Shown here in pieces: positions 11,000-29,335 of a stretch of DNA of 64,000 nucleotides (position 1 is the first letter of the stretch; each line of letters opens with the position of its first letter). The translations under genes and the position numbers were made by a program. The notes under the pieces were generated by a model. That model saw only the letters and a program-made list of their open reading frames with translations. It did not search any database and had not been told where the DNA came from. This DNA is from Lepidodermella squamata. Its lineage: Eukaryota > Animalia > Gastrotricha. The DNA lies in assembly GCA_047495785.1 (NCBI GenBank), contig JBLDXI010000011.1, forward strand, positions 1,240,001-1,304,000. Reading direction: 5' to 3'.

Positions 11000-12449
11000 T
11001 CAAATTGAGCAGCCGCGCATGTTCTGGAAAATCATCCACGGCTCATGTGTACCTGATGCGTTTCGACTGCATTCGTTATCTTCTGGAAACATTTCATTCG
11101 CTTCGCCTAGAAACGCGTGATCAATGAATCGCCAACACTCGCTCATCAGTGCGTACCTAGCTGGGCCGTAGACGCGATGCACATTGTGCATTACGAAATC
11201 AACACCAGTTGCCACGCCAAAATACAACAAGCCACCGGGTTTCACCAGGCAGCTGATCCTAGCCATATCCATCAAATCGCCGTCAGGATTCAGAGGATCT
11301 CCATAACGGCCCAATCCGCTGTGCTCTATGCTTGAGTAAGAAATCGCGAAATCGAACCGGCCGTAGAGCTCACCGGAAGCTATTTTCTGCCCAACTTCCC
11401 TAGCGTTGACGTAGCCCAAGTGTTTATGGCCTGGCTTGATAAATTCACTCAGATCGAGGTATTCAATGGTGGTCACGTGACCAGCGCCGGCTCGTAGCAC
11501 TTCCAACTCAGCCCATGGCCAGTATGAACCAATGATTACCCCTCGTTTGCCAGCTATTGAGTATTTTTCAAGCATCAGTCTGAATGGCGCGATCGACCTG
11601 TAGAACGGATAGGAGGCCTGAGTCTTGACCTTCCATAAATCCTTTGTCCCGTGCGCAGAGTTTTCAGCCAGAGACCGCCAGCTATCTCGCGATTCTGCGA
11701 CATCAGCCGCGTTGTCCGGCGTGTATTGCTGTGACAGTTTGAATTCGACCAGGCGATACCAAGGCTGGGTGCGGCGTAAAAATCGTTCCCTTTCGCCCTT
11801 TTTATGCCAGACCTCGGCTAATTTCCCGAACTTCACCGGAACCTCATGCTTTGGAATAACTTCATGAATGGATGTTTTGAGATCTAGGCGCCAGTAATCG
11901 GTCAATTTTGATAGCGGACTGTTTTCCGGATACTGTTTCAAAAAAGTAAATTTGTAGTAATTTTGATCGGCAGTTGTCTTGGCGTTCAGCTCATCCAAGT
12001 TGTTGGCAAACGTTATCCTGCTGTAGTCGTCTGAATCAACAGCAAAAACTGGATATCTTGGATTTTTACTTTGCCATTGTGGGATTTTAGCGATCGAAAT
12101 AGAATTTTGCCATTCGGCTGGAATTAGCGGGCAGTTTGTTGCTTGTGCCGCTTCACTTTTAAAATTCGACAAACAACGGACGCAAAATCCCGGTAATCTG
12201 GAGAGAAACGCAGTTGAATTAGGATGAACTGGAGCGAAAAACAAACCGATTACTGCCGTAGTTTTCGATCGCTGGCGATTCGAATCTATAGAATTTGAAT
12301 AACTTTAGAAGTTTTTTTTAGTAATCGGAAAATGCCTGCCTATTATCACGATTTTCTGCATTATCGTTGGATAAAAGTGACAAAAATAATAAGCCGGCAA
12401 TCGATAAGCTTATAATCACAGCAGATTTCAAGCTAAACAACTGTCTCAT
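11000..12449 (-). CDS. DUF268-family SAM-methyltransferase-like type II membrane protein 1; exons 12449-12340, 12285-12247, 12197-11000 (448 aa)
   Basis: Motifs GVIIGSYWPWAE, VTTIEY, FDFAISYSSIEHSGLGRYGDPLNPDGD, LVKPGGLL and HRVYGPARY. Exon 1 encodes a TM anchor (MRQLFSLKSAVIISLSIAGLLFLSLL). Both introns are phase 2 and conserved in the paralog. Confidence 0.85.
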
Positions 12450-12952
12450 CTTTATGCTAACAACGCCTCAAAAGTCATATCCCACGTTCAGCTCTCTGTG
12501 ACACCTCATTAGAACAATCCTCATTCTGAGAGGTTGTCTACCTTGTCTAAAACGCACACATCATTGACTCCAATCCCCCGTCGCTAAGCTATGAAATATC
12601 GTTAACATCGTTAAATAACTCGGACTTACGCCTGTTAACGTCAGGTTGAAGGTGAGAGGTGACAAGTAAAGTCGTTTGCTTTCGCCTCCTTTATTCACAT
12701 TAAAAAGCCTCTTTTTACTAGTGTCACCCATCACATAGAAATAGCACCACTCGACGTAGTTCTGCTGTAACGCTACCGTATTTGTGTTATTTTTGTGCTA
12801 CCATTTTCGTATAATGAGAAAAGCGTCCGCGGCTGGAGATGGCACCACGCGACAAATGCCGCGTCTGGATCCTCGGGTATCGCGGTCTTGTCTCTAGCGA
12901 AATCAACCAGTGTTTCCAGAGTATAGGCACCGTTATTTCTCATCTGTCACGT

Positions 12953-13150
12953 TATTTGGTGTTCTTGGGCGAAATTGCCACTCTTCTGCCTCAGTTGGCT
13001 CGTCCGGTTATTTTTTAAATAACCAAACCAACAAATTTTATATCGTCGGATAGGGAAAATTTTCAATATGAATAAACTATTTTTTCAAACAATTACCGGA
13101 CGAGCCAACTGTGGCAGAAGAGTGGCAATTTCGCCCAAGAACACCAAATA
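12953..13150. mobile_element. Palindromic MITE (Tc1/mariner-like, TA flanks)
   Basis: Near-perfect inverted arms of about 55 bp (TTTGGTGTTCTTGGGCGAAATTGCCACTCTTCTGCC...), flanked by TA on both sides. Confidence 0.75.
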
Positions 13151-13942
13151 TGGAATTTTGGCGAATTTTAGAAAATTATCCATAAGGGACCTGGTATAAA
13201 AGTGTTCCTGGTATCATTAGATAGAGGGCCGCTTCTAGTATTTATGAGAAATCGAAATTTTCTGCGGCTTTTTTAATTTTTGAAATTAATTAAAATTATA
13301 ATGGGCGGATAGGGCGTTGGGTGGCATAAAAGCGGTCGGGTGCCGCCCTTTTTGCAATAACAGCTCGAATAAATTCACTATGGAAAGATCGTTATTTACT
13401 ATTTGTTTCAGTGTTGTCTATGATTAAAATCAAACCTACATCAGCGTTAAGTGCTGTGTCGATTTTCGAAAAAACCACAGGGCCCAAAATCGCCGAAGCG
13501 AGTGTCTTAACAACACTCCTATGGCGATTAGGGAAGCTGTTGTGAAGAATTTGCACTTCGAAAGCACGATGAACAAGCTTGATTTGACTGCGGCAAAGCC
13601 TGTTTCTGCCATCAACATGGGAGTAGTAACGCACTTCTAAGGCTCCGTTCCACTTCATTGGTTTTCTGACTGCCAGAGAACCCCATGTGCTCGCGGAACA
13701 CCTCGACGTCCTCGTAATTACAAGCGTTGCAGAGCACCTATTGACTATCTATTTCCCCGTATATTCATCGTCATCATCGGCATCGATTACTGACTGAGTC
13801 ACATTAACCGGCTGTTGTTCCCTCGATAATTGGACCCGGCCCAGTTCAATTATCGAGGTTTCACTGAATCATGATCATGAGAGGCTCAGCTTTGTTCAGT
13901 ACGTAAATTTCTTTCTTTATTTAGCAATTGTGAATAAAAGCT

Positions 13943-15260
13943 TCAATTGATCTCCTCGAACAATTTGTATTGCCAAGATGGGCCGCGGATCCTATCAAAC
14001 GTGTGTACAATTTGACAATACAGACATTGCCTGTCAGCAGTATCGTTCTCCACCTTGCCAAGCTTCAAAGGATGATAAATGTAGTTGGACGGATTGTAAG
14101 TATCGTTCACCGGCCATTGGCGTTCTTGACCATTTATGGAGCCGGCATAACTTATAAACTGAAGCCTTGATTCGGATCTTGATAAGCCCTTGATGATGGT
14201 GCCAACTGCCAGCTCCATGTACACTTTATGTTTGGCGAACAGCGTAAAAATTTGAAGAGCCTCGGGCACGTCTTCAGCGGAGATGAAGAATAAATCCGCG
14301 TAAATGTTCCATATCCTTCTGTAACCTAAAATAGATGCAAAAGAAGTGAGATTTATGACGAAAATATTGGGAATAATCCAAGTTCCCCATTCACCCATCG
14401 CCCTAGTAATTCGAATTGCATTCACCTGAACTTGCGTCCGCTAAGTTTTTTGCAAACTTGGGATACAAGGTTTCAGCCGCCGTGCAAGCTTCACGGGCAT
14501 TTTCTTGGTACAAAGTCAATACGTCCCATTCCGCAGGTTCTGTGCAATCGGCGGCATTGTCCCATAACTTTCCTCTGCAGGTCATTTTCCGATCCACGTC
14601 AATGATGGATTGCGGCGGGCCCATGAGCCAATTTTTGCGGACGTCAAACGTTTTCCGCGTGAACTGCCACAGGCTGGGTATTAGGTCTTCGGAAACGTGT
14701 AAAAATCCGTCGGTTTCCTTGTTATCCACAATTCTTCGAACGTCTTCGATGTAGTTGTAAGCTTTAGGCACGCATGAGTAGAATACCGCTCCGGTTGGAT
14801 GAGTTGGTTCTTCGGTTAATTCGATAAGCGAAACATTGACAAAAGGTAGCCATTTGCCGTTGTCGTAATCTTTCAGCCTTTGCAAGCCAGTAATGCAAAG
14901 CACGACGCGTTGAAAAATTCCCTCGTAAAGCCGGAACATTTTTGGAATAGCACCGAAATGCGGATTGTTGAACGAGATGATCAGAACAATTTTCTTGAAG
15001 TTGACAAGATCTTCCACGCTTTTCGAGTTGAAAATCTTCAAGTTGCGAGTGGTGAAAAACTTGAGACAAGCATCACCCTTGGCTTGTTTGTAGTAGGAAT
15101 CGTTGTTGCAATCAGCAATTGCGTGTTTCTGCATGATTCTTTGAGGCTCATGCTTCAGGTTCGATACTAACGGCTTCCAATAGATTGATAATAACAGGCT
15201 GGCCGATACAAGGACGATCTGACAAAGGTATCTTATTGCATTACCGCCAAATAGGTTCAT
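13943..15260 (-). CDS. STELLO/DUF288-like protein 2; exons 15260-14426 and 14325-13943 (405 aa)
   Basis: Close paralog of 2592-6430 with a 100-bp phase-1 intron (gtgaat...ttttag) at the same position. Confidence 0.85.
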
Positions 15261-15843
15261 GTTGATATAAGCATGTTACGCCATAGCTCTCCGGCTTAAT
15301 CACATACACGATTCATCGGACAGAAATTATTATAAAATTCATATTCCAAACTGGATGGTAGAAAAAACTCAATCATCCGAATAGCGTTTGTATCCCGAGG
15401 ATTGTTAAGATTTGGAAGGATTGGTCACGATTTCCACGTTTCGCTTCGTTCATACTTAGGAATGGCTGGTCGCACATATACCTAACCCTTCAAGGCCGGG
15501 AACTAGAATACATACTCAAACTGCGGCTATTCACCTGGGTATCACATACTTCCAGATTTACACCAAAAAAAGGTTTAGCAAACGTTTAGACGGCCACTAC
15601 GGCTACGCAACACAGGACACAGGAATTTGAGCCATTTAACGCGACGGGTACACGCAAGACCCGCTCAATTTGATGACGAATGACAATTGCCCGAAAAATG
15701 TTGCCGTTTTCGCTTGTTTTACGATAAAAAATGGCAATATCAAAAAAGAAAGGACTGCGTAATACGTCAGTTCGTTGGTATAAGGTCTGATGAATGATGA
15801 GACCATTGATGAGACCATGATGAGAGCCGGTGGTTGCTCATCA

Positions 15844-16003
15844 TTCTCAAGATTCAAGACGAGCATACTCAAGTTGTATAGACTAAGTAGTTGTCGACCT
15901 CAGCGGGCCAAGTATTTAGAAATTTAGGGTTAGGGTTAGGGTTAAGGTTAGGCTTGGGGTTAGGGTTATGGATTATGGTTTATCGAGTAACTAATCTTGA
16001 GAA
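15844..16003. repeat. Mini-element with 11-bp inverted ends and a degenerate (TTAGGG)n core
   Basis: TTCTCAAGATT ... AATCTTGAGAA bracket about 7 TTAGGG-like units at 15924-15966. Confidence 0.55.
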
Positions 16004-16341
16004 AGATAGATAAACTCCCTCATCCCACGCTACATGCACTGCCGCTCTTCGCACTCTCTCATGTCCCATTCTTGATCGGTAAATGTAGCTCCGTTTAATC
16101 AATAATATCTTTACGGATACTCAACGCATGATAATCTCTGCCTTGAAAGTCAACTTTGCGTCTTAGATTATAATCTTAAAATATAACAACATTGAAAGAT
16201 ACTTATGTGGACCAGGTTTCTTAATACTTGCCAGATGACTTTTTGAGTGAGACGCAAAGTGGCAGGCAGGATTGTCGACTTCAGGGATTGGTAAGTTCGT
16301 GCTAAAGGTGAAGTACACACCATTCAAATCCCAATCTTCAA

Positions 16342-17571
16342 ATGCTCTTATCAAGGCTGCTTTACATTTCCGGTCAAATCTTACTAGCAACTATCAGCTG
16401 TTTGAATTCACTCGCGCGATGGGCGCGGATTCACACCGGTGCCATGAGCCTGCCATTCTCTGATGAGTTTGTTTTTTCAAACAACTCAACTGCCCCGGTG
16501 TTAACAAGCGTTTTTGTCACGTTACATGGCACGACATTTGTGTTAAATGTCGTTCTATCACTGCCCAAACTCGAAAATTGGGAGATGTCCTTTGATAATT
16601 ATCAATTTTGGTCGTCTCAAGTTAAATGGAGCGCCGCCATAGAAACTTACCGCCTAGCCCTTCGCAAATTCACCCGTGGGCGATTTGACCACAACACACA
16701 TTTAGACACGATTGTTCTACGATGTATCATCTCGCGGCAATTAGCTGTTACATTCGCTCAACGCATCCCATTTGAAATAAAAGCTTTAATGGCTGATGAG
16801 AATTTAGCAACTTTCAGCGGAAAATGTTCTCACGTTTACCAACCAGAGAACGTGGAATATTCGTTGGCTAGCTGCTCAGTGGCTACGGGAAATCACACAG
16901 TTGTCAGCATCGCTGAATGGATTGAATTTCACAAATTAGTAAATATCAGTCATTTTCTGATCTATATTCCAAGGGAAATTTTTTCGATGATGAGTGATTC
17001 ACTGGAAAAATTTGTTCGCGAGAAGGTTTTAACGCTAGTTGCATGGAACTTTGATGGTCGATACTTCTTCGCTGAAAGTGCTGAAAACGATTGTTTGCAT
17101 CGATTAAAATTTAGAGCCGATTACATATCGTTCCAATCAATAAATCGGTATTTGGATACTTTTGGCAAAGATTTGATAGGCATGGCACGAAAATATGAAG
17201 CTACGATTATTGTTGTTTATCCGTGGCGCTTTTCGAGCCTTAATTCATCTGCTGAGCCACAATCGGCGGAATTGAGCCGTGTGGTAGAATCGAAGTGGCG
17301 TGAGCAGCACCCGGTTTTCGGTTATCCCATGGCTGAAGTCATCGCAAAATCTTCGAAAGTTAACTACGCGACTGATTTGGAGTTGAAAGACGGATTTGGC
17401 ATTGATCCTTATAACGATTTACGAGCTGTTTCGTTCGAGCAGCTGCAGTTGGGCGGCTTTAATACGGCTGCGCTATATGACGACTCGCTTGCAATTCGTG
17501 TTGGGGCGCTGATTTCCGAAAGACTGAAGCCATTTCGTGTCGCAAACGACTCAACATTTCGGCTTGAATAG
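16342..17571 (+). CDS. GT92 (DUF23)-like protein a, intronless, DxD motif absent
   Basis: Motifs LASCSV, IAEWIEFHKLVNISHFLIY, VLTLVAW and NDCLHR. The expected DxDE position reads FQSINRYL. Hydrophobic N-terminus. Confidence 0.75.
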   Translation: MLLSRLLYISGQILLATISCLNSLARWARIHTGAMSLPFSDEFVFSNNSTAPVLTSVFVTLHGTTFVLNVVLSLPKLENWEMSFDNYQFWSSQVKWSAAIETYRLALRKFTRGRFDHNTHLDTIVLRCIISRQLAVTFAQRIPFEIKALMADENLATFSGKCSHVYQPENVEYSLASCSVATGNHTVVSIAEWIEFHKLVNISHFLIYIPREIFSMMSDSLEKFVREKVLTLVAWNFDGRYFFAESAENDCLHRLKFRADYISFQSINRYLDTFGKDLIGMARKYEATIIVVYPWRFSSLNSSAEPQSAELSRVVESKWREQHPVFGYPMAEVIAKSSKVNYATDLELKDGFGIDPYNDLRAVSFEQLQLGGFNTAALYDDSLAIRVGALISERLKPFRVANDSTFRLE

Positions 17572-17702
17572 CGCTGCCACTTCTTGCCGATGCACTCTCA
17601 TTCATAGAACGGATTTTTTATATAATATTTCTTACTTTGAAAATAAAGCAATATTCACTATAAATGTTTCAACCTAGAAAAAATGCAGTTTTTAAGCTTG
17701 TC

Positions 17703-17952
17703 CAGTGTGCGACTTTCAGGGGGGGGGATGCGGGGGATCATCCCCCCAAGCTCGGCCGGACCAGACAACAAAATGAGAATTTATCCCACTGTTTTGTTAA
17801 TTTTGGAAGGTTCTGGGGCGTGTTTTAGTGGGAAATCTCCAAAAAAATTTCGCTTCGCTCGGTTATTAGCCGAAATGACTCGGCATTTTGGCAAAAACAG
17901 CAAAAAACAATTTCTCATCCCCGGGAGCTCGGGGATCGAAGATCGCACCCTG
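17703..17952. mobile_element. hAT-type MITE (250 bp), complete
   Basis: TIR CAGTGTGCGA / TCGCACCCTG and perfect 8-bp TSD AGCTTGTC (17695-17702 and 17953-17960). Related copies at about 5245 and 40141. Confidence 0.9.
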
Positions 17953-18273
17953 AGCTTGTCTTATCGGCCGAATCTGAAATCGGTGATGTTTATTCCTAAC
18001 TTTTGAACTGATGATTCGGTAAGGTTCTGTTTAATTAGCACGGCTACATTTCAGTGTAGAAGATGGAAATTTTGCCGAAAGGGGGATATATAGGTAAGGG
18101 CCAACCCTTATATCGCTCAAAAGTTTCCGCAGGGGCCAGGGAAAAAAATAAGGGTCCCCCTGTGGTCCTGCTTCGAGCTTGGAACGCGAAATATCTGGTA
18201 ATTTGGTTCAGGGAAACATGCTATTTTATTCATACGAAATAAATTGTTCAGTTATTGTAACAAAACATCAGCT

Positions 18274-19518
18274 CTATGTCTGAGATGCTATTGATACTGT
18301 CTGATTTGTCGTATCACGGAATATCTCAAGTCTCTCCAAAATCAGCGCCCCGACACGAACCGCAATTGAGTCATCAAAAACTGCAACCTTATTGAAACCA
18401 CCCAACTGCAGCCGCTCAAATATAACAGCTCGTAAATCGTTATAAGTATCAGTACCAAATCCGTCCTTCAACTCCAAATCGGTCGCATAGTTTACTTCCG
18501 AAGATAGAGCGATAACTTCAGCTATAGAATAACCGAAAACCGGATGCTGCTCTCGCCACTTCGATTCAATGACATGGCTCAACTTCGCCGTTGGTGGCTC
18601 AGCGGATGAGTTGAGGCTCGAAAAGCGCCACGGATAAACAACAGCTATCTTTGCCTTGTATTTTCGCAACATTCCAAGCAAATCTTTGCCAAAAGTATCC
18701 AAATAGCGATTTATTGATTGGAATGATATGTATTCGGCTCGGAACTTTAACCGATACAAACAATCGTTTGCAGCACTTTGAGCGAAGAAGTATCGATTCA
18801 TTCCATCAGAATTCCATGCAATCAGCGTTAAAATCTTCTCACGAACATATTTCGCTAATGAATTGTTCATCATGGAAAACTTCTCCCTGGGAACGTAGAT
18901 CAGAAAGTGACTGATATTAACTAATTTGTGAAATTCAATCCATTCGGCGATGTCGACAATTCTGTGGTCTCCCAAAGCGACTGAGCAGCTAGCTATTGAA
19001 TATTTCACGTTCTCTGGTTCGTAAACCTGAGAACATCTCCCGTTGTAGCTCGTCAAAACATTGTCTGCCGTTAAAGCTGTTATTTCAAACGGGCTACGTT
19101 TAGCGAATGTTGCAGTTAATCGAGGTGAGATGATGCATTGCAGAACAATTGTATCCAAATGCGTGTTGTAGTCAAATCGGCCATGGTTGACTTTGCGAAT
19201 GGCTAGGCGTTCTTTTTCGACGGCGACACTCCATTTAACCTGGAACGCCCAGAATTGATAGTTATCAAAGGACAACTCCCAATTTTCGAGTTTGGGCAGC
19301 GATAGAACGGCATTTAACATGTACCTCGCGCCATATGATGTGACAAAAAGGCTTGCTAATACCGGGGCGGTTGAATTGTTAGAAAAAATGAACTCATCAG
19401 TGAATGGCTGGCCTGTGGTTGCAGTGTTATGGCGCGCCCATAGCCTGAGGAAATTTGACGCACTCATGGTAGCTATTAAGATTTGACTTGAAATGCTTAG
19501 TAACTTTATTGGGAACAT
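18274..19518 (-). CDS. GT92 (DUF23)-like protein b, inverted paralog of 16342-17571, DxD absent
   Basis: Colinear with protein a over its full length and shares FQSINRYL. Upstream non-coding sequence 19540-19620 also resembles 16240-16320. Confidence 0.75.
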   Translation of the reverse strand: MFPIKLLSISSQILIATMSASNFLRLWARHNTATTGQPFTDEFIFSNNSTAPVLASLFVTSYGARYMLNAVLSLPKLENWELSFDNYQFWAFQVKWSVAVEKERLAIRKVNHGRFDYNTHLDTIVLQCIISPRLTATFAKRSPFEITALTADNVLTSYNGRCSQVYEPENVKYSIASCSVALGDHRIVDIAEWIEFHKLVNISHFLIYVPREKFSMMNNSLAKYVREKILTLIAWNSDGMNRYFFAQSAANDCLYRLKFRAEYISFQSINRYLDTFGKDLLGMLRKYKAKIAVVYPWRFSSLNSSAEPPTAKLSHVIESKWREQHPVFGYSIAEVIALSSEVNYATDLELKDGFGTDTYNDLRAVIFERLQLGGFNKVAVFDDSIAVRVGALILERLEIFRDTTNQTVSIASQT

Positions 19519-20751
19519 GTTAAGCTTGGGACTCAGTGTCTTAATGTGTAGTCATCTCTAACACGAAGTGACTAATCCCTGACGTTGCCAATCCCACCTG
19601 CCAATGACAGGTCTCTACATGAGCGCCTTAGACTAGCATTAAAGAACCTCCATCCACAAAGTTCAAGTATGAATGAGGTCAAGAAATTCACAAGTGATTT
19701 ATAACAGGAAAATACCATGTAATGTGCCTTGTAGCAATATGCTCGATTCCGGGGCTATATTAGTTCAGTCCGGCCCTGATCAAGATTTTGAAACCCACCT
19801 GTCTCTATCTATCATCGTTAAGACTGTGCGGTGAGTGGTCACCCTATCCATGAGATGTACCATAGGACGCTGCGGCTTGCAGAGAATCAGAAAAAGCGTG
19901 ATATTTTTAATGAGGTCAAAAGTCCAACTCGACCAATAAATCATCTCATTACATTTTTTGCAATCATCTTAAGCCTCTTTTTTTGCTTAAGATCAACGAG
20001 ATCAACACATCTTTACCCAGCGTCACGCCGATCTTTTGCTGTATGAAAGAAGTTTCAGCAGTTTTTAATTATTTACATTTAAAAAAAATTAAAATTTCAA
20101 TTATTAAAAAATTATAAATTTCGAAATTACTGGACTAAAAATTAAATCAAATGCACAATGCACGGAATAATTATGCACAGCGGTTGGCAACCGAGGGGTC
20201 ATGTAATGGGAGCTTCGAAGCCGCGCGGCGTCCTATAGTACGTCTCATGACCCTATCGGCCCAGCTGATTTCAGGCGATTTTTTGAGCAGCCTGATTTCT
20301 ACATCAGATGTTTTCAAAAGTCAGTATTCAGATCAGAATTCAGGTTTCCGCGCGACAGTTTACGAGTATACAAGAATCACGCACAACGCCTGTATAAGTC
20401 GAAGCCGATAGTTGATCCTTATCTTATGCCTGAATGAAATACGAGGCATATCTAAAAGCTAAAAGGGCATTAAAATATACCCAAATTGGTGATAAAGCGC
20501 ATCAAAGAAAGATCTCTGGGGTAGTTTTTTACCCCTGGGACCCGCTGTCCAATTGCCCGTCCCTAATACCCGGAAAAAAATCGAATAATTAGAAGATTTG
20601 TTGGTGCTTTATTCGTGGCATTAAAGTAAATAAAGTTAAGTCAAAAGCATGAGTTCATTAACAATTAACAATTTCGTTGAATTAAGGATTGGTTTCACTT
20701 GTTTCAAAAATCATCACTACATCCAGGCGACGCATTCAATTGCACAGCAAC

Positions 20752-22309
20752 ATGCAGCATATTAATCAACGATGGTTGCTAACTTGCAGTCTATCAACCG
20801 CGTTCATGCTGTGGTTGTTAAATCTCAGTCCAGCTAAATTTCTCACGCTGTTTGACCTTTTCGACGTTGAAGAGCCGGTTTTCCAGGAACCTTTGCCACC
20901 GATAAGTTCACAGACAGCCGTCGCTGATAACGCAACGTGCTTCCATATCATAACGCGGCATGCCAGTTTCAAACCGTGTAAAGTGGGGGCAGAAGCCCTC
21001 GGACAATTCCCGCGTGAAAATCCGCGATCGTTCAGCGCCGAAGCTGCGGCAAATGCGGACGACCAGACCGCCATAGCAGAGAACATCAAGTCGATATACA
21101 TAGCGAGAATGAAGCAAAAAGTTAGCTCAAACTGCCGGCACAAGTTGGTGGTATACTCGTGCACTACCTTGGGTTGTCGAGGGTGGGGCGATCGTCTTCG
21201 AGGAATTATCACTGCGTTCTACACGGCCCTGCTAACCGACTCGTTGTTCTTGATCGACGCGACGCATCCAGTGGATTTAGGCAGATTTTTCGCTATCAAC
21301 TCGGAGCTTTACAATTTCGGCACTGATTCAGCACTGATTCCCTGCTTGCTGCGCTATAGCAGCCTGCATACATACCAGTCGATGGATATCGACGAGCCGG
21401 TTCGTTATGCTATGGTTGAATGGTTTAATTCGTTTATACGAAATGATAATTGGAATGGCGTTAGAGTGCAGACGAATACCATGGTAGCGGTTGAACAGGG
21501 CTTGAAGACGGATTTGTTTACAAGCCTTGCCGATGTCTACGGATTGCGATCTTACTCCTATCTACAACTTGTTTCCGCCGCGCTTCGAATCCTTTTTGAT
21601 AGAAGGAAACCGCGCTTGGAAACTATGGTGGAAAACACAATGCGCAGAGTGTCCGCATCCTCTCATTCCGCTTCAAATGCAAATATAGGTAAGTTTCGAA
21701 ACCAAGCATAAACCTAAAATTCAGTGAAAGTTTCATGATGACGGCCGACTCTTCAAGTAGTTCATATCATTGTGTGGGGAGGGGTTGTAGACTTTCAACC
21801 TGTTCGAGGCCTCCTTATATCAGCTAAATCTGTTTCATATAGGCATCCATATTCGAGTCGAACGGGTCAGCGTTAAAATGATGAACTGCTTCGCTCGTGA
21901 AGTAGGAAAAACCATAAAAAAGTACAATTTAGTTCGGCCTGGCATTTACATCTCAAGCGACAATGCGAATGCTACATCCCGCCTGAAACGACTGCTATGG
22001 CGCGATTATCGTATCAATGCACTCGAGCCCGAGGACAGTGAAGTTTGGCACATAGACTTCATGGATAGCGGAGGCCAATCGACTGTACCGACCGAAACTC
22101 TATGGGAAAAGACTGCGGCGACCTACCACGACTGGCTGGTTTTAACTCGCATGGACTATTTGATTATCAGCCGGAGTGGCTTTTCAGAATTCGCGTCGTA
22201 CTACTCACGCCGGCCAACGCGGCGCTTTCTGCACAAGCAGCATCATAAGTGCGCCTTTGAAGATTACGATTCCCTGTCAGATCTTTTATTCGACATCAAA
22301 AACACGTAA
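20752..22309 (+). CDS. Fucosyltransferase-like protein A (GT11/GT23/GT37 superfamily); exons 20752-21688 and 21843-22309 (467 aa)
   Basis: N-terminal TM. Motifs GWGDRLRG, spliced IG|IHIR (motif I), IYISSD (motif II) and DWLVL..MDYLIISRSGFS (motif III). Donor G|gtaagt and acceptor atag| join in phase 1. Confidence 0.8.
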
Positions 22310-22846
22310 ACTAGAAATGTGAGCAAGGGTAGCAAAATTTGACTGAAAATGATATCGATTCCCGAAAATAAAAAGTATTGGGTCACGAAGGTTCATTTCT
22401 GATTATTTTACGTCCCTGAATAACTCAGAAACGTTTAAGAGATAGATAACTTAGGATGTAGCCCTTTAGCGATAGCAATGAAGCAAAAAAACCCAAATTG
22501 AACAACAGCCCCTGCATACTCATACACAAATTATGACTCATCACTCTGCAAAAAATACAGCGATGATTCATATATATTAGCTCTTGTTCACACGAAGAAA
22601 CGTAAACTCACTTTTCTTGAACGCTGAAATAAGCCTCGGAATCAGCTCGACGAGGAGAAGGCGTTAGGCTATTAAAATGTGAAAAATGATTATTTTCGAT
22701 TTTTAACGTCAATTCGAAAATTTTCACACACTTGGCGGCGTTTCCAAGAAACAGATTTCCAGAAAGCGAATATCCACTGCGCAGTGGTGATTCATACTCA
22801 ATTGTTCATATTCAAAATCGACTGGTTGGGGCAATGAAATATATAA

Positions 22847-23059
22847 CCCAGACCGGCACGAGCAATTTTGGCTCATTCGAACAACTCCGAACAATTCGAT
22901 TTGACCCCTTTGTTCGCCTGTTTTTGAGCATTTTCCGGCCGAACAACTCCGAACAAATCCCAAAATAGGCGAACAGGTTAAAAAACAGGCGAACAAAGGG
23001 GTCAAATCGAATTGTTCGGAGTTGTTCGAATGAGCCAAAATTGCTCGTGCCGGTCTGGG
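22847..23059. mobile_element. CMC/CACTA-like palindromic MITE
   Basis: Perfect inverted arms of about 79 bp beginning CCCAG (22847-22925 and 22981-23059), with AA on both flanks as a possible 2-bp TSD. Confidence 0.8.
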
Positions 23060-23494
23060 AAGCTGCAAGCAACTTGGGAGCATTCTGGTGAAACGAAACT
23101 TCGATTCGAGTTATCAGTTGCACCTCATCAGTGACACCGGACACGCACTGTTTTAGACTCCCGCGGAAGTTTCTGCGAGTCACCTTACATCTTGTTAGCG
23201 TTAGCGACATTAGCGTTAGGATTGGGTTTATTAGGATTGGTGAATTGGCCCTTCGCACAAGTATTGCATGATTCACAGTATACAAACCGGCTTCTCCGTC
23301 TTTCATTTCGATCAAATGCAGTTGCCGAGGTAGAGTCCCAGTTAATTATTGCTTTAATCACTTTCAAACACGTTACTTCCCTTGTTGCGAAGCTAGTCCC
23401 GTGGAATTATCATCTGGTAGATTTACTAAGCCTACTTTTTCGAGGCTTCTTGGTAGTAATCTTGCTTGCTGTCATCCTATTGGTCTAGAATTAA

Positions 23495-23895
23495 CAGTAC
23501 TGCCCGAAATTTTGGGCCTGTCATTTATTTTATTTCAAAACAAGTCGAAACCTCGTCTTATATTTGAGACCGCCCTTTATTTGAGGCCTGACCTTTATTA
23601 TTTCGAACCCTTCTAGACTCATCACATGTCGCTATACAGCGCTTCCAGTCCCTATGAATTGGCCTCTAAATAGATCGGCATATGATCGGGTTTTACTCGA
23701 GGAGAAGGCGATGATGATCATGACGTAGTAGAATTCGAATTCCTTTGAACTATTCCGAACTTTATCAATATATCATAAAATGATGATACACGCGTGGGCG
23801 ACCTGACCATTATTTGAGGCCTGACCTTTATTATTTCGAATGGCCCTTGGACCCCGTCTTTTATTTGAGGCCGACTTACTTTTCGGGCAGTACGG
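23495..23895. mobile_element. Probable Tc1/pogo-like MITE
   Basis: Ends CAGTACTGCCCGAAA / TTTCGGGCAGTACGG, with internal repeats TTATTTGAGGCCTGACCTTTATTATTTCGAA. Confidence 0.6.
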
Positions 23896-24161
23896 TAATT
23901 TAATCTTTTCGCGCGATTAACCCATATATTCATTTGATAGATAATTGCTCAAACTCCATCTTGCTATAATATATATATTAACCGGTACGTCGTTCGAAAG
24001 TTGCCCTTTGACATCAGCAGATCACATTAAAAACTTCAAATTTTGCCGCCTGAGCTCGCAGGAATGTAAAACCCCTGATAAAAGAGATTGGAGGTTTCAT
24101 GCTCGACACTGCGGCTGCGTTACACCTGAGTTCTTAGCCACCCAATCACTTCTGACATTAA

Positions 24162-25580
24162 TTGATTTTGGGCGCATACCTCCGGTTACATTTGATCACA
24201 TTTGTTAGATACCCTGTCTTATTTTCGATTGTGGGAATGCTTATTCTCAGAATAATTCTGCAGGTGTCAATTGCGATCGCTTACTCAAGTCGACTTCGCG
24301 GTATACCCTCCTACAACAAAAACTCGCCTTCACCCGAACTCATTGAGGCCCTGTCCAAGTGCGAAAAATTAGGCGAATTGTATGACAAACAGAATCTAAC
24401 TCGAAGTGCCGAGTGCGAATGCCGTCGTAACGCGCTTCTTTACGCCAATTTTAAAGCTTCACATGAGCCTGTTATCAGCGGCTTGTTTTTGAAGCAAACT
24501 GGAAGCCGGCGTGACATCTACGTCAGCATATCACTAAGATCATACTCATACCACAACGCGTCTTACCAATTGCAAAACAGCAAAGACTATTCATGGAGGA
24601 TAAAAATGCCCGGAGTTTACTTCATTCGCTGCTACCCAGTTTCGAAACGCGCAGATGTTGTCCTTCACTTTGATGCTATAATGCTTAGATGCCGCGTGCC
24701 AGACGCGACGCAAATTCCTGATAGACCATTTGAAATTTCAATCATGCGCGGTTTAGCGAAATGGCACAACAGCTACACGGACTTTCGAAGGCATGGATGC
24801 TTGGTTTGCGACGATGCTATCATCCCTAAACAGCTATTTAACATGTCAATTTGCGCATTTGTTGCTAAATACCACATGAGCCGACTTCCGGAGTGGATTG
24901 AATACCACTTGCTGGTCGGTTTCGATCATGTCTTGCTTCACGTTAATGACGCGGATTTTTTGGATTACTTCGAATTTTTAGCGTATTACCTGGAGAAGGG
25001 TGTTCTAACCCTTGTTCCGTTCTTCTTCAACAAGGAATTTCCGAATTTTTATTTTCAAACCGCTCACATTGAGAATTGCCTGAACCGTTTCAAAGGACGA
25101 GCGACTTGGTTAGGCTCGTTGGACGTTGATGAATTTTTCGAATTCTACGAGGGCGACTTTAACGCCAAACTCGAGACTTACTACAAAGCTGATCCGCACT
25201 TGGGCGGTGTTGCGTTTTGGACGATGTACCATCAGCAATCGGTACAAGAATCGGAGTCTCACGTTGGCCGTTACGCCGTAGCTCATGCTATCCGTGATTT
25301 CACGCACATTGACAAGATTCCGACGTTAGGTGGGCGTGAGAAGGTAGTGCTACGTTTGGACAATGTTCGAACCGGCGATGTGCATAACGTGCTTGAAGGT
25401 GGGGTCGTCCAATACGCCAATCCGTACACCGAGGGCCGATTGGCCCACTTTAAACCTTCATACGTTAACGGAGGGCCGAGTGCAGTCCCAGAAGCGACGA
25501 TTAGAGCGAGATACGTGAGCGTCATAGAAGAAAGATTAACATTATTTGAGCAATACTTGCGAAATAAGACAGTGAGCTGA
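24162..25580 (+). CDS. GT92 (DUF23) glycosyltransferase c with intact DxD; true start uncertain (ATG at 24237 or an upstream exon)
   Basis: Motifs MSICA, LPEWIEYHLLVGFDHVLLH, GVLTLVP, QTAHIENCL and WLGSLDVDEFF, plus a late H (LAHF). Hydrophobic N-terminus. Confidence 0.85.
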   Translation: MILGAYLRLHLITFVRYPVLFSIVGMLILRIILQVSIAIAYSSRLRGIPSYNKNSPSPELIEALSKCEKLGELYDKQNLTRSAECECRRNALLYANFKASHEPVISGLFLKQTGSRRDIYVSISLRSYSYHNASYQLQNSKDYSWRIKMPGVYFIRCYPVSKRADVVLHFDAIMLRCRVPDATQIPDRPFEISIMRGLAKWHNSYTDFRRHGCLVCDDAIIPKQLFNMSICAFVAKYHMSRLPEWIEYHLLVGFDHVLLHVNDADFLDYFEFLAYYLEKGVLTLVPFFFNKEFPNFYFQTAHIENCLNRFKGRATWLGSLDVDEFFEFYEGDFNAKLETYYKADPHLGGVAFWTMYHQQSVQESESHVGRYAVAHAIRDFTHIDKIPTLGGREKVVLRLDNVRTGDVHNVLEGGVVQYANPYTEGRLAHFKPSYVNGGPSAVPEATIRARYVSVIEERLTLFEQYLRNKTVS

Positions 25581-27249
25581 ATGAAACTAGAACGGAATAT
25601 TGAGAATTGACGTTCTGAACGTCACTGCTGAGTTCATTTTTTGGCGGACCACACTATTTCCCCTCTATCCCCGAGCCAGTGATACCATCGAAGTGTGCCA
25701 CCGTAGTGCCAAGTGTAGCAAGGTGTGGCGCATCTAATGAGATCAATTAAGAAACAAAATTGCATTCCATCTTAATAGGGGGCTGCTTTAAACAGAGCGG
25801 TCTGCTTAACCAGGGTCCGCTGAGTGCCAAAAACCCTGGCTTTGTTGAACTTGGCAGACCCAATTAGCGGACCGAATCCAGTTGTAGTACTTTGATGTTT
25901 GCAACCGCCAGAGTGAGGCTAAATAGCTCAGGTGTGCATAGTAGGTCATAGGATGGCACTTTTCAGGGGGAATCGACTAATCATATGGCGCACCTCCAAC
26001 CTGGTCCGAAACACTGGTCCGCTAAAATTTGGTCTGTTGAACTCGGCGACGTATTTTCTGACACGATATGCATTTTTTCATGAATCTCAATAAAACTCTG
26101 CATTTAAAAAAATTCTACAAGGAGGTGTTTCATAATTTGCCGAAATACTTTATAACTATTCTTGGTACATCCTATACTTATTGCTATGTAGTTAAGAGCT
26201 TTTTCAACTTTTTCAACCTCAAGGCCCAAATAAATGTGATTGCCCTCTATGCTTATGCGCTGCGTTTTGATTCTGATTTGACATTTACACGGCCTCGATG
26301 AATAAGCTTAGCAGTTGCCTATCTAGGGGCTCATTGATAAGCAGATTCAAATTTATTCGTCCAAATTCAACGGAACATCTCATTGATTCCTGGAAAAACG
26401 AGAGAAGCCTAATTGATTCATCTATTCTGTGGAATTGCGGTTTTCAGTCCAGCGGCTGAGTTGCAGGACAATTATCCAGCTACAATAGATCCTAGCTTCT
26501 TTACTACTAATTCTAAATAATGCCGAAATGAGTTCGCCGATTTTGCCAACAATGTCCTTTTCCTCATATGGATTGTTCGGAATCATTCTACTGAAACTAA
26601 TGCGAACGTTTAACAGGATTTGCTACGCATTATGGCTAGGAGAATGCGCCTGAATTCTGACCATGCCGCGAAACAGGGTTCGTCAACGATAGCGTATTTA
26701 AGTTCATTCCTGTTGTGATTAGTGTGATTACCGACGCGATTGATCGATTGAAGTCCTTGCTACTTCATCAGTAATAATCAGTAATCAGTAATAGAAAGCT
26801 TTCACGTGGAGATGGCTTAAGTACGGTTTTTTGCAAACTTCACCGACATCATCATGATTGGTCTGAAAAAAGTAGAAAGTACGTCATTAGTAATAGAATT
26901 AACGTATTGTTGCTGTCGATTATTCTGTCGATTGTTGCTGTTGAAGTCGTTATTCTTGCATATAGCTGCCGAATGGAGTGCTAACTTTCAATGTGTAACA
27001 TTTTGACAACGGGATTTACACTTCGTCTGAATGAAAATGAATAAAAATGATGTATAAAATAAAAAGGATAAGATCATGCTGGTGGAATATGGAATTTTTT
27101 CAATCGGAAACCGACTATGAACTGAGTAGCTATTACTATTACCCTGACTTCCATGGAATGAGTATGTAATAAAACACAGGCGCAAACTGACAAAAGAGAG
27201 AGGACAATTAGGCATGAATTATCGAATGTCCTTTTATTTGTCTTCATAG

Positions 27250-28711
27250 TTAAACTGAGCAGCCGCGCATGTTCTGGAAAATCATCCACGGCTGCGGGTT
27301 TCTATTGCGATTGCAATCGTTATTTTCCGGAAACAGTTCATTCGCTTCGCCTTGAAACGCGTGATCAATGAATCGCCAACACTCGCTCATCAGTGCGTAC
27401 CTAGCTGGGCCATAGATTCGATGCACATTGTGTATTACATAGTCAACACCAGTTGGCACGCCCATATACAGCAAGCCCCCGGGTTTCACCAGGCAGCTGA
27501 TCCTAGCCATATCCATCAAATCGCCGTCAGGATTCAGAGGATCTCCATAACGGCCCAGTCCACTGTGCTCTAAGCTCGAATAGGAAATCGCGAAATCGAA
27601 CCGGCTGTACAGCTCACCGGAGGCTATTTTCCGCCCAACGTCCCTAGCGTTGACGTAAGCCAAGTGTTTATGGCCTGGCTTGATGAATTCACTCAAATCG
27701 AGGTATTCAATTGTGGTCACGTGATCAACGCCAGCTCTCAGCACCTCTAACTCAGCCCATGGCCAGTATGAACCAATGATTACCCCGCGTTTTCCAGCTA
27801 CTGAGTATTTATCAAGCATCAGTCTAAATGGCGCGACCGATGTGTGGAACGGATAGGAGGTCCCCGTCTTGACCTTTCCTATATCCTTCATCCCATACGC
27901 AGTGTTGTCAGCCAGGGACCGCCAGCTATCTCGCGATTCAGCGACATCAGCCGCATTGTCCGGCGTGTACTGTTGTATAAACGTGCTTTCGATCAGCTGA
28001 TACCAGGGCTGGGTGCGATGTAAAAATCGTTCCCTTTCGCCCTTTTTATGCCAGACCTCGGCTAATTTCCCGAACTTCACCGGAACCTCATGCTTTGGAA
28101 TAACCTCATGAATAGATGTTTTGAGGTCAAGGCGCCAGTAATCGGTCAATTTTGATAGCGGACTGTTTTCCGGATACTGTTTCAAAAAAGTAAATTTGTA
28201 GTAATTTTGATCGGCAGTTGTCTTGGCGTTCAGCTCATCCAAGTTGTTGGCAAACGTTATCTTGCTGTAATCATCTGCATCAACAGCGAAAACTGGATAT
28301 TTAGGATTTTGGTTTTGCCATTGTGGGATTTTAGCGATTGAAATAGAATTTTGCCACTCGGCTGGAATCAGCGGGCAGTTTCTTGCTTGTGCCGCTTCAC
28401 TTTTGAAATTCGTCAAACAGCGGACGCAAAATCCTGGCAGTCTAGAGAGGGCTGATGGTTAATTCGGTTGACTTGAAGTGGAAAATTCAACAAACCGATT
28501 ATTGCCGTGCATTTCAAGGACTGGTGATTCGAACAATCTATGGAATGAGAAAAATTAGGAATTTCTCGATAAGATTTACGGCAACCTGCCTAGTTTCGCT
28601 ATTATCTGTTCCATCTGATGTATCAAAGAATAAAACCGATAAAAACAGTAGGCCGGCTACGGATAAGCTTACTAGCACGGCAAATTTCAAGCTAAGAGAC
28701 AGCTTTCTCAT
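27250..28711 (-). CDS. DUF268-family methyltransferase-like protein 2; exons 28711-28590, 28537-28496, 28441-27250 (451 aa)
   Basis: Paralog of 11000-12449 with the same motifs, TM anchor MRKLSLSLKFAVLVSLSVAGLLFLSVLFF and identical intron positions and phases. Confidence 0.85.
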
Positions 28712-28964
28712 CGCTTCACTTGCTCATGAGCGTTAATCAGTTTATAGATCTTGCTGTATCTTTGAGCTCATCTCTCGTCTTGTAACAATCCTTTTGTATG
28801 ACAATCCCTCCCGAGAAATGCCGACAGATTTCTGTTGTTTTCAAGGCAAGAGGCAAGTTCAATAACTTTAACGTTGAGCAATAACTTTAACGGCAAGTGC
28901 ATATATGAGTTACAGCTCAATTCCGGGCCCCCTTAGTTTCGTGCAGGTCCCAACGTTAATTGCG

Positions 28965-29090
28965 CAATCAGATGGTGAAAGTGGACTTGAGGGCAAACGC
29001 AAAACTTGAGGGCGACCCTGAGGCCATGAAATGTACACAAATTTCGGCTTTAATGCGTTCGCGCACAAGTCCACTTTTACCCTCTGATTG
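28965..29090. repeat. Short imperfect palindrome (MITE-like)
   Basis: CAATCAGATGGTGAAAGTGGACTTG ... CAAGTCCACTTTTACCCTCTGATTG. Confidence 0.55.
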
Positions 29091-29335
29091 ACTATAGGTG
29101 AATCATCATTTGTGCATCGTCAGGTTTGATGTGGACCAAATCGAAAAATGACTTCACTTATAGCTGGCAGAATGGAAAGCAGAAGTTCTAGGTCAAATTC
29201 TGTTTGAGTTTTTTTATGAGCATTCGTTTTTTTTGGAATGGCAATGGCCATTTTAATGAAAATGTTGCTACGGCTGCCGATCGGCATTTCGAGACGTTAG
29301 CAAGAAGTTCATGTTTATTTTCGATTACACAGAAG

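What the first reader, a model, noticed from the sequence alone, without database searches (positions are those of the whole stretch)
11000..28711. DUF268 proteins are type II membrane proteins once two small exons are spliced: candidate Golgi glycan O-methyltransferases
Seen: the ORF track misses exons 1 and 2. When spliced, both paralogs have a short basic N-tail, a TM helix, a stem and the MTase-like domain, which is glycosyltransferase topology, and they sit among GTs. Known: O-methylated glycans occur in nematodes, molluscs and flatworms, and the enzymes are poorly defined. Inference: gene neighbourhood suggests DUF268 methylates sugars in the Golgi lumen.
Basis: partly seen in the sequence, partly recalled or inferred. 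Interest (0 to 1): 0.72.

Follow-up and report, generated by a model that had tools for sequence, protein, structure and literature searches.

The report
Membrane-anchored DUF268 methyltransferases among glycosyltransferases
Two neighbouring genes of an uncharacterised enzyme family (DUF268) encode membrane-anchored, secretory-pathway methyltransferases sitting among sugar-adding enzymes, which makes them good but unproven candidates for the long-sought animal enzymes that methylate glycans.

Summary
Both DUF268 genes (minus strand, 11000-12449 and 27250-28711) need two small upstream exons. These add a basic tail, a 19-20-residue hydrophobic helix and a polar stem. The frame closes only if intron 1 is GC-AG (TAG|GCAGG); the obvious CAG|GT donor runs into a stop.

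- **Gene model:** support is comparative. All six DUF268 copies in this genome have such an exon, exon indels are multiples of three, and the main exon has no usable ATG. No read spanned a junction.
- **Fold:** the catalytic part folds as a class I SAM methyltransferase, and the family motifs are intact.
- **Neighbourhood:** the window holds an eight-gene run: 2 DUF268, 3 GT92, 2 fucosyltransferase-like and 1 STELLO-like lead. The three DUF268 copies on other contigs are not among glycosyltransferases.
- **New independent support:** bacterial DUF268 genes lay in polysaccharide clusters in 7 of 7 contexts. In 9 of 30 genomes they lay within 3 kb of a GT10/GT11 fucosyltransferase, against 0.33 expected.

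My reading is type II secretory-pathway sugar methyltransferases, possibly acting on fucosylated glycans (about 0.55). Activity, acceptor and Golgi residence are untested. The searchable literature still lists these enzymes as unidentified. The scan noted a similar glycan cluster, without DUF268, elsewhere in this genome.

The parts
28590..28711 (-). par2 exon 1: ATG at 28711, basic tail, TM helix FAVLVSLSVAGLLFLSVLFF, acidic stem; ends AG| in phase 2
   Evidence: An in-frame stop lies 4 codons before the ATG. An X1 contig piece covers 28618-28669.
28538..28589 (-). par2 intron 1, 52 nt, GC-AG (TAG|GCAGGTTG ... CCATAG|A)
   Evidence: This is the only frame-keeping splice. The GCAGG is conserved in par1. 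No junction read was seen.
28496..28537 (-). par2 exon 2, 42 nt (14 codons; part of the stem, LFESPVLEMHGNN)
   Evidence: 76.9 % identity to par1, with a 3-nt indel.
28442..28495 (-). par2 intron 2, 54 nt, GT-AG
   Evidence: An X1 contig piece ends at 28442.
27250..28441 (-). par2 exon 3: N-terminal extension with 3 conserved Cys, then the DUF268 / class I methyltransferase domain; stop at 27250-27252
12340..12449 (-). par1 exon 1: ATG at 12449, basic tail, TM helix SAVIISLSIAGLLFLSLLS
12247..12285 (-). par1 exon 2, 39 nt, flanked by GC-AG intron 1 (12286-12339) and GT-AG intron 2 (12198-12246)
11000..12197 (-). par1 exon 3: DUF268 methyltransferase domain; stop at 11000-11002
29336..30484 (-). 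Fucosyltransferase-superfamily-like gene directly upstream of par2 on the same strand (GGYGNRL and IRRGD motifs)
   Evidence: The XG_FTase match is below the Pfam cut-off. Atlas score is 0.96 to FUT8_N_cat, O-FucT, XG_FTase and NodZ clusters. X1 covers its ORF.
20689..22309 (+). Second fucosyltransferase-like gene (two ORFs, 20689-21711 and 21878-22309); paralog of 29336-30484
   Evidence: E 4e-15
16342..17571 (+). GT92 glycosyltransferase gene
   Evidence: 33.7 bits, cut-off 23
18274..19518 (-). GT92 glycosyltransferase gene
   Evidence: 43 bits
24162..25580 (+). GT92 glycosyltransferase gene
   Evidence: 63.6 bits
13943..15260 (-). Type II-looking gene upstream of par1 with no Pfam match; STELLO-like glycosyltransferase is a lead only
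   Evidence: atlas score 0.90

Best explanation
Each gene encodes a single-pass type II protein of about 450 residues. It has a short basic cytosolic tail, a signal-anchor helix, a stem of about 30 polar residues, and a luminal class I SAM-dependent methyltransferase of the DUF268 family.

The enzyme most likely works in the Golgi. It would use SAM imported by an MFS_5 (SAMT-1-type) transporter and methylate a sugar hydroxyl on glycans built by neighbouring glycosyltransferases, possibly on or next to fucose.

- **Shown:** the gene structure by comparative evidence, family membership, the predicted fold, conserved motifs, and the gene neighbourhoods.
- **Inferred:** membrane orientation, Golgi residence, SAM use, a sugar acceptor, O-methylation, and the link to fucose.
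For: **Topology**
- Six of six genomic copies carry an ATG-started basic-tail-plus-TM exon.
- Indels keep the frame, and exons are more conserved than introns.
- dN/dS is 0.23-0.34.
- There is no usable ATG in exon 3.
- 41 of 75 homologs of 290 aa or more have an N-terminal hydrophobic segment, against 0 of 45 short ones, which are largely prokaryotic.
- 9 of 11 C. elegans DUF268 proteins have secretory signals (PMC3534327).

**Enzyme**
- The AF2 model has pLDDT 81.5 and pTM 0.88.
- All top Foldseek hits are SAM methyltransferases. VIA Z reaches 13.7.
- Motifs are invariant from bacteria to animals: G..PW.E after beta1; an acidic residue ending beta2; SS.EH.GLGRYGD.L.P.GD after beta4; KPGG.

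**Glycan link**
- The window holds an eight-gene glyco cluster.
- C. elegans DUF268 genes lie in glycosyltransferase clusters (PMC7614267).
- Seven of seven independent prokaryotic contexts are polysaccharide clusters.
- A GT10/GT11 fucosyltransferase lies within 1.5 kb in 6 of 30 genomes and within 3 kb in 9 of 30. Expected are 0.18 and 0.33.
- One metagenomic protein fuses DUF268 to an F5/8 type C domain.

**SAM supply:** MFS_5 transporter genes are present in the genome (family assignment from bioRxiv 10.1101/2021.07.06.451061).
Against: - No read spans a splice junction, and intron 1 needs an uncommon GC donor in both genes.
- The glycine-rich SAM loop is atypical: only the first Gly is kept, as IGSxxPW.
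- The three copies on other contigs (L004, L005, L006) sit beside RING, ankyrin, dehydrogenase, ZIP and SEA genes, not glycosyltransferases.
- No mollusc or flatworm protein was named among the best 120 hits of the three searches, although those animals have heavily methylated glycans. The lists are truncated, so this is weak.
- The luminal part has 0-1 N-glycosylation sequons and an odd number of cysteines.
- MFS_5 also occurs in organisms without methylated glycans.
- The fucosyltransferase adjacency statistic uses a random-placement null and related genomes.
- Another, non-DUF268 methyltransferase family sits in a second glycan cluster of this genome (scan note s1-393984). It could be the real glycan methylase.
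Confidence: 0.55

Rival explanations
1. Secretory-pathway methyltransferases whose acceptor is not a glycan. They would methylate luminal or secreted proteins, lipids or small molecules, and the glycosyltransferase neighbourhood would reflect only shared regulation of Golgi genes.
For: The best structural matches are protein N-terminal, nicotinamide, ubiquinone and toxoflavin methyltransferases, none of them a dedicated glycan O-methyltransferase. Three of six copies are not near glycosyltransferases.
Against: Fold matches of this kind are generic for class I methyltransferases. Prokaryotic members sit inside polysaccharide clusters in 7 of 7 contexts, and often beside fucosyltransferases. One Foldseek match is NodS, which methylates a chito-oligosaccharide.
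Confidence: 0.2
2. The hydrophobic segment is a cleaved signal peptide. The proteins would then be soluble ER-luminal or secreted enzymes, or glycan-binding proteins, rather than Golgi-resident type II proteins.
For: Many homologs have short N-terminal hydrophobic segments that look like signal peptides. PMC3534327 counts the C. elegans DUF268 proteins as signal-peptide proteins. No predictor of cleavage sites was available.
Against: The hydrophobic core here is 19-20 residues, preceded by 2-3 basic residues and followed by an acidic stretch with no small-x-small site. SAM is not expected outside cells, so extracellular catalysis is unlikely (established knowledge).
Confidence: 0.12
3. The upstream exons are not part of the mature mRNA. 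The GC-AG model would be wrong, and the proteins cytosolic or N-terminally different.
For: No junction-spanning read was seen. The donor is non-canonical.
Against: Exon 3 is conserved up to its acceptor but has no ATG before residue 184/208. The same exon design recurs in six of six copies, four of them with ordinary GT donors. Indels keep the frame only in the proposed exons. A contig of a probable RNA run holds exon 1 sequence and a piece ending at the acceptor.
Confidence: 0.06

Closest known systems
Pfam DUF268 (PF03269), defined on C. elegans proteins
   Same: Same domain, well above the Pfam cut-off, and the same invariant motifs. The C. elegans members also mostly carry secretory signals (PMC3534327) and lie in glycosyltransferase gene clusters (PMC7614267).
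   Different: These proteins are longer (about 450 aa against 310-380 aa). They have an extra region of about 110 residues containing Cys-x-x-Cys before the catalytic domain. They come from another phylum. No member of the family has a demonstrated function.
Plant Golgi type II polysaccharide methyltransferases (QUA2/Methyltransf_29 pectin methyltransferases; GXMT/DUF579 glucuronoxylan 4-O-methyltransferase)
   Same: Same logic: a signal-anchored class I SAM methyltransferase in the Golgi lumen, dependent on an MFS_5 SAM transporter (bioRxiv 10.1101/2021.07.06.451061).
   Different: Unrelated at family level. There is no Pfam match to these families even at E 10. The plant enzymes act on cell-wall polymers; QUA2-type enzymes make methyl esters.
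Bacterial sugar methyltransferases of polysaccharide, Nod-factor and macrolide pathways (TylF/Methyltransf_24, Methyltransf_21, NodS, NoeI)
   Same: They are encoded in the same kind of clusters in which bacterial DUF268 genes were found. NodS is among the structural matches.
   Different: Different Pfam families. They often co-occur with DUF268 in one cluster, which suggests distinct specificities.
C. elegans SAMT-1-dependent glycan methylation (Wohlschlager et al. 2014, as cited in PMC7614267 and the GoSAMT preprint)
   Same: It is the pathway these enzymes would belong to. It needs luminal SAM, and its methyltransferases are unidentified.
   Different: Only the transporter is known. No link between DUF268 and this pathway has been tested.

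Membership tests
Pfam DUF268 (PF03269) | Profile match above the curated cut-off (25 bits) | tested here: met
   127.6 and 133.5 bits. All six genomic copies score 97-136 bits.
Pfam DUF268 (PF03269) | Family-wide invariant motifs (G..PW.E; SS.EH.GLGRYGD.L.P.GD; KPGG; N..R.YG) | tested here: met
   62-sequence alignment: invariant G223, W228, E230, D282, S288, G294, G296, R297, D307, G322, N338, Y343.
Class I SAM-dependent methyltransferase fold | Seven-stranded Rossmann-like sheet with alternating helices | tested here: met
   Predicted model only: pLDDT 81.5. The Foldseek top 500 are all methyltransferase-fold proteins. VIA Z is 12-13.7 over 180-200 residues.
Class I SAM-dependent methyltransferase fold | Glycine-rich motif I loop (GxGxG) after beta1, and an acidic residue at the end of beta2 that binds the SAM ribose | tested here: inconclusive
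   Only the first Gly is kept (V-I-G-S-x-x-P-W). The acidic residue is present in par1, par2, L003 and L004 (TTIEY / TTVDY / TSIDA) but is Thr in L006.
Class I SAM-dependent methyltransferase fold | Binds SAM and transfers methyl | not testable with these tools
   No docking or assay was available. The PDB sequence-profile search found no relative.
Golgi type II membrane protein (glycosyltransferase-like topology) | Short basic cytosolic tail, one N-terminal TM helix, stem, luminal catalytic domain | tested here: met
   Sequence level only. The tail carries +2/+3 charge, the helix is 19-20 residues (mean hydropathy 2.2-2.6), and an acidic stem follows.
Golgi type II membrane protein (glycosyltransferase-like topology) | Residence in the Golgi | not testable with these tools
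   Needs localisation of a tagged protein.
Plant Golgi polysaccharide methyltransferases (Methyltransf_29, DUF579) | Pfam profile match | tested here: not met
   Only DUF268 was reported, plus a chance-level DUF1244 hit, at E up to 10.
Glycan O-methyltransferase (functional class) | Methylates a sugar hydroxyl of a glycoconjugate | not testable with these tools
   Only gene-neighbourhood evidence.

The most novel reading that the evidence does not exclude
DUF268 is the missing family of eukaryotic Golgi glycan O-methyltransferases, in nematodes, several spiralian phyla and many algae. On this reading it descends from bacterial polysaccharide-cluster enzymes that work as a pair with a fucosyltransferase, so its typical product would be an O-methylated fucose-containing epitope such as the ones fungal and animal tectonin lectins recognise.
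Probability: 0.33. Interest if true: 0.8.

Novelty: new member of a known kind. Interest (0 to 1): 0.6.

Why it matters
O-methylated sugars on N- and O-glycans of nematodes, molluscs, flatworms and algae are targets of innate-immune lectins and are antigens of parasites. Yet no eukaryotic enzyme that makes them is known outside plant cell-wall synthesis. PMC7614267 (2023) says so for C. elegans, and PMC12168206 (2025) says so for plant RG-II.

A defined candidate family makes the question directly testable:
- It has luminal topology and a methyltransferase fold.
- Its neighbours are glycan-building genes from bacteria to animals.
- C. elegans has 11 DUF268 genes and a ready phenotype, resistance to the tectonin toxin.
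- Bacteria offer simple two-gene fucosyltransferase-DUF268 modules for expression.

The idea is only a candidate assignment, and parts of it (secretory signals, clustering with glycosyltransferases) are already in print.

Tried and rejected
1. **Canonical donor.** CAG|GT at 28586/28585 (and the matching site in par1, which has GC there anyway) puts exon 2 out of frame and meets a stop. I replaced it with the GC-AG model.
2. **Read evidence.** It shows exon-only coverage but not the splice.
3. **PDB sequence search.** A sequence-profile search of the PDB found nothing. The fold came only from structure comparison.
4. **N-terminal region alone.** Folding the 120-residue N-terminal region by itself gave pLDDT 52, so no fold search was run on it.
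5. **Phyletic test.** I asked whether DUF268 follows the known spread of methylated glycans (mosses versus vascular plants, molluscs, flatworms). The top-120 lists named none of these taxa, but they are truncated and mostly unnamed, so this is inconclusive.
6. **Universal GT neighbourhood.** I expected all DUF268 copies to sit among glycosyltransferases. This is not so for L004/L005 and L006.
7. **Pfam on the neighbours.** The two fucosyltransferase-like genes stay below the cut-off. Their assignment rests on motifs, the atlas lead and their mutual similarity.
8. No search or fold was run on the joined (spliced) protein. Exons were searched by reference, and the join was checked for frame, hydropathy and dN/dS only in local scripts.
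Full report
**What is in the sequence**

The window is eukaryotic, with short introns of about 50 nt. Another agent of this scan took the genome for a gastrotrich; I did not test that. Two long minus-strand ORFs, 11000-12244 (par1) and 27250-28416 (par2), match Pfam DUF268 at 127.6 and 133.5 bits against a cut-off of 25. They are about 90 % identical in DNA over the main exon.

**The upstream exons**

Upstream of each ORF lies an ATG, 28711 for par2 and 12449 for par1. Each ATG is preceded by an in-frame stop a few codons before it. It opens a short frame that encodes a basic tail (MRKLSLSLK / MRQLFSLK) and a 19-20-residue hydrophobic helix, followed by an acidic polar stretch.

With CAG|GT (exon 1 ending at 28586) the next exon is out of frame and stops. 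The frame closes in both genes only if exon 1 ends four bases earlier, at TAG|GCAGG. That makes intron 1 a GC-AG intron.

| | exon 1 | intron 1 | exon 2 | intron 2 | exon 3 (with stop) |
|---|---|---|---|---|---|
| par2 | 28711-28590 | 52 nt | 28537-28496 | 54 nt | 28441-27250 |
| par1 | 12449-12340 | 54 nt | 12285-12247 | 49 nt | 12197-11000 |

An AG|A arginine codon spans both junctions. The joined frames are 451 and 448 codons without a stop. The join was made only in a local script, to check frame, hydropathy and substitution rates.

**Is the model more than chance?**

- **Same design in every copy.** The genome holds six DUF268 copies. All six have an ATG-started exon encoding a basic tail and a hydrophobic helix, 210-406 nt before the conserved LPGFC(V/A)RC start of the main exon. 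In the four other copies (L003-L006) the intron has an ordinary GT donor. In three of those, L004-L006, it is in the same phase as here.
- **Indels respect the exons.** Between par1 and par2, indels in the proposed exons are 3, 9, 3 and 6 nt, and those in the proposed introns are 2 and 5 nt. Identity is 74.5, 76.9 and 90.2 % in exons 1-3, 55.8 and 67.3 % in the introns, and about 40 % in the flanks.
- **Purifying selection.** dN/dS is 0.34 for exons 1+2 and 0.23 for exon 3.
- **An upstream start is required.** Exon 3 is conserved right up to its acceptor but has no ATG before residue 184 (par2) or 208 (par1).

**RNA evidence**

- The probable RNA run covers only the coding parts of par2 and of the upstream gene, and nothing in 1.3 kb of intergenic DNA, while the DNA run covers everything.
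- From the bin depths and the 36-letter side reported for one contig, I infer that this contig holds exon 1 (28618-28669) and a piece 28407-28442. That piece ends at the predicted exon 3 acceptor, given one ambiguous base.
- The contig is a fold-back chimera, and no contig spans a junction.

So transcription of exon 1 is likely, but the splice itself, and the GC donor in particular, is unconfirmed.

**The protein**

An AlphaFold2 model of the par2 exon 3 product, built on 62 aligned homologs, has mean pLDDT 81.5 and pTM 0.88. All 50 Foldseek matches listed, of at least 500 with E ≤ 0.001, are class I SAM methyltransferase-fold proteins. VIA-align gives Z 12-13.7 over 180-200 residues, spanning model residues of about 115-395. 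A sequence-profile search of the PDB found nothing, so the family is distant from every solved enzyme.

The alignment shows motifs that are invariant or nearly so from bacteria to animals:
- G-S-x-x-P-W-x-E directly after beta1;
- an acidic residue ending beta2 (T-T-I-E-Y);
- F-D at the start of beta4, followed by S-S-x-E-H-x-G-L-G-R-Y-G-D-x-L-x-P-x-G-D;
- K-P-G-G on beta5.

The glycine-rich SAM loop is atypical, since only its first glycine is kept. The Glu-His and the acidic residues after beta4 lie where class I methyltransferases place acceptor-binding and catalytic groups. Taking the histidine as the general base is my inference.

The first 110 residues or so of exon 3 carry three invariant cysteines (C-x-x-C plus one) and conserved aromatic residues. 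Folded alone this region is poorly predicted, with pLDDT 52. I treat it as an extension of the catalytic domain, of unknown role.

**Topology**

The positive tail, the acidic stretch after the helix and the length of the helix argue for a signal anchor with the catalytic domain in the lumen. I had no signal-peptide predictor, so this is a rule-based reading.

Among homologs, 41 of 75 proteins of 290 residues or more have an N-terminal hydrophobic segment. None of the 45 shorter ones does; several of those proved bacterial. Suh and Hutter counted secretory signals in 9 of 11 C. elegans DUF268 proteins (PMC3534327).

**Neighbourhood in this genome**

From 11 to 30.5 kb the window holds eight consecutive genes:
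- par1;
- a type II-looking gene with a weak STELLO-like lead;
- two GT92 genes;
- a fucosyltransferase-like gene;
- a third GT92 gene;
- par2;
- a second fucosyltransferase-like gene, 625 nt upstream of par2 on the same strand.

The GT92 assignments pass Pfam's cut-offs. The fucosyltransferase-like assignment rests on four things: the G-G-x-G-N-R-L and R-R-G-D motifs, sub-threshold XG_FTase matches, an atlas lead at 0.96 to FUT8, O-FucT, XG_FTase and NodZ clusters, and the paralogy of the two genes.

The cluster continues upstream of the window. It includes a third DUF268 copy (L003), a borderline STELLO match and a DUF6492 gene. However, the copies on contigs C58/C33, which are near-duplicates of each other, and on C24 lie among RING-variant, ankyrin, dehydrogenase, class C receptor, ZIP and SEA genes. 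The glycosyltransferase neighbourhood is therefore real but not universal.

The genome also has MFS_5 genes, the family of the C. elegans SAMT-1 and plant Golgi SAM transporters (bioRxiv 10.1101/2021.07.06.451061). That is necessary for the model but not discriminating.

**Independent evidence from prokaryotes**

DUF268 is not a Caenorhabditis family. Hits include other nematodes, annelids, a brachiopod, rotifers, a copepod, charophyte, haptophyte, diatom and xanthophyte algae, a fungus, and many proteins of about 240 residues from bacteria.

I looked at ten genomic contexts of short homologs. Two were eukaryote-like and uninformative, and two of the remaining eight shared one arrangement. All seven independent prokaryotic contexts are polysaccharide clusters, with GT2, GT4, GT9 and GT41 genes, flippases, sugar epimerases and dehydratases, DegT aminotransferases, GDP-mannose synthesis genes and other methyltransferases.

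In three of them the immediate neighbour is a fucosyltransferase:
- a GT11 gene overlapping the DUF268 stop (L009);
- a GT10 gene next to a flippase (L012);
- a GT10-DUF268 pair standing alone among housekeeping genes in a Verrucomicrobiota genome (L027).

I then sampled 401 genomes of that genome's phylum; 35 carry DUF268. In 30 of these I mapped GT10 and GT11 genes.

| Distance from DUF268 | Genomes with a GT10/GT11 gene | Expected under random placement |
|---|---|---|
| within 1.5 kb | 6 of 30 | 0.18 |
| within 3 kb | 9 of 30 | 0.33 |
| within 10 kb | 11 of 30 | 0.99 |

The null is crude: glycan genes cluster anyway, and the genomes are related. Even so, the recurrence with two unrelated fucosyltransferase families is hard to dismiss.

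**Explanation and rivals**

The best-supported reading is a luminal, signal-anchored sugar methyltransferase, possibly tied to fucosylated glycans (about 0.55). The rivals are:
- a secretory-pathway methyltransferase with a non-glycan acceptor (0.2);
- a soluble, secreted or ER form after signal-peptide cleavage (0.12);
- a wrong gene model (0.06).

A further caution comes from scan note s1-393984. It reports a second glycan cluster in this genome with methyltransferases that cannot be DUF268, since all six copies are accounted for elsewhere. DUF268 is therefore not the only candidate.

**Comparison with what is known**

These genes are members of Pfam DUF268. By predicted structure they belong to the class I methyltransferase fold. 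They work like the plant Golgi polysaccharide methyltransferases (QUA2 and GXMT types) but are not members of those families.

In the library I could search, eight papers hold the string DUF268; three of them concern the family, and none assigns a function. Paschinger et al. list DUF268 genes within C. elegans glycosyltransferase clusters and state that the fucose-modifying methyltransferase remains to be identified (PMC7614267). The RG-II review says the same for plants (PMC12168206). Other searches found no identified enzyme.

**Verdict**

The genes themselves are new members of a known family. The value lies in making an open question in glycobiology directly testable.

Noticed in passing
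window 28912-29179: The DNA run's contig depth jumps about tenfold here (1068 and 599 against about 94 in the flanks), with many loose ends. This looks like a high-copy repeat between the fucosyltransferase-like gene and par2.
   Followed up: no
window 12990-13170 (minus strand, upstream of par1): Two arms of about 55 nt read as reverse complements of each other around an AT-rich spacer of about 60 nt. This looks like a MITE-like inverted repeat in the intergenic region.
   Followed up: no
L004 (G000:C58:332663-333844) and L005 (G000:C33:902125-903306): Two near-identical DUF268 loci share the same neighbours (RING-variant, ankyrin, short-chain dehydrogenase, class C receptor). They are either a haplotig pair or a recent segmental duplication.
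   Followed up: partly
L027:4888-6666: In a Verrucomicrobiota genome, a GT10 fucosyltransferase and a DUF268 gene form a two-gene module among ribosomal and housekeeping genes. It is a minimal system for testing the pair.
   Followed up: partly
P0162 (metagenomic protein): DUF268 is fused to an F5/8 type C (discoidin) domain, a fold that often binds carbohydrate.
   Followed up: no
L020:7950-8696 and L021:4187-4942 (G000:C11, 5-15 kb before the window): A borderline STELLO-like glycosyltransferase match (27.6 bits, cut-off 27.8) and a DUF6492 gene lie between the third DUF268 copy (L003) and the window. The glyco cluster therefore spans at least 45 kb.
   Followed up: partly
L022 (G000:C20:1298916-1299998), L023 and L024 (G000:C1): Three MFS_5 loci (the SAMT-1 / GoSAMT family). 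The two on C1 give identical scores 92 kb apart, so they are a recent duplicate.
   Followed up: no
L009:5061-7316: The UDP-glucose/GDP-mannose dehydrogenase gene in a bacterial DUF268 cluster carries an intein splicing domain.
   Followed up: no
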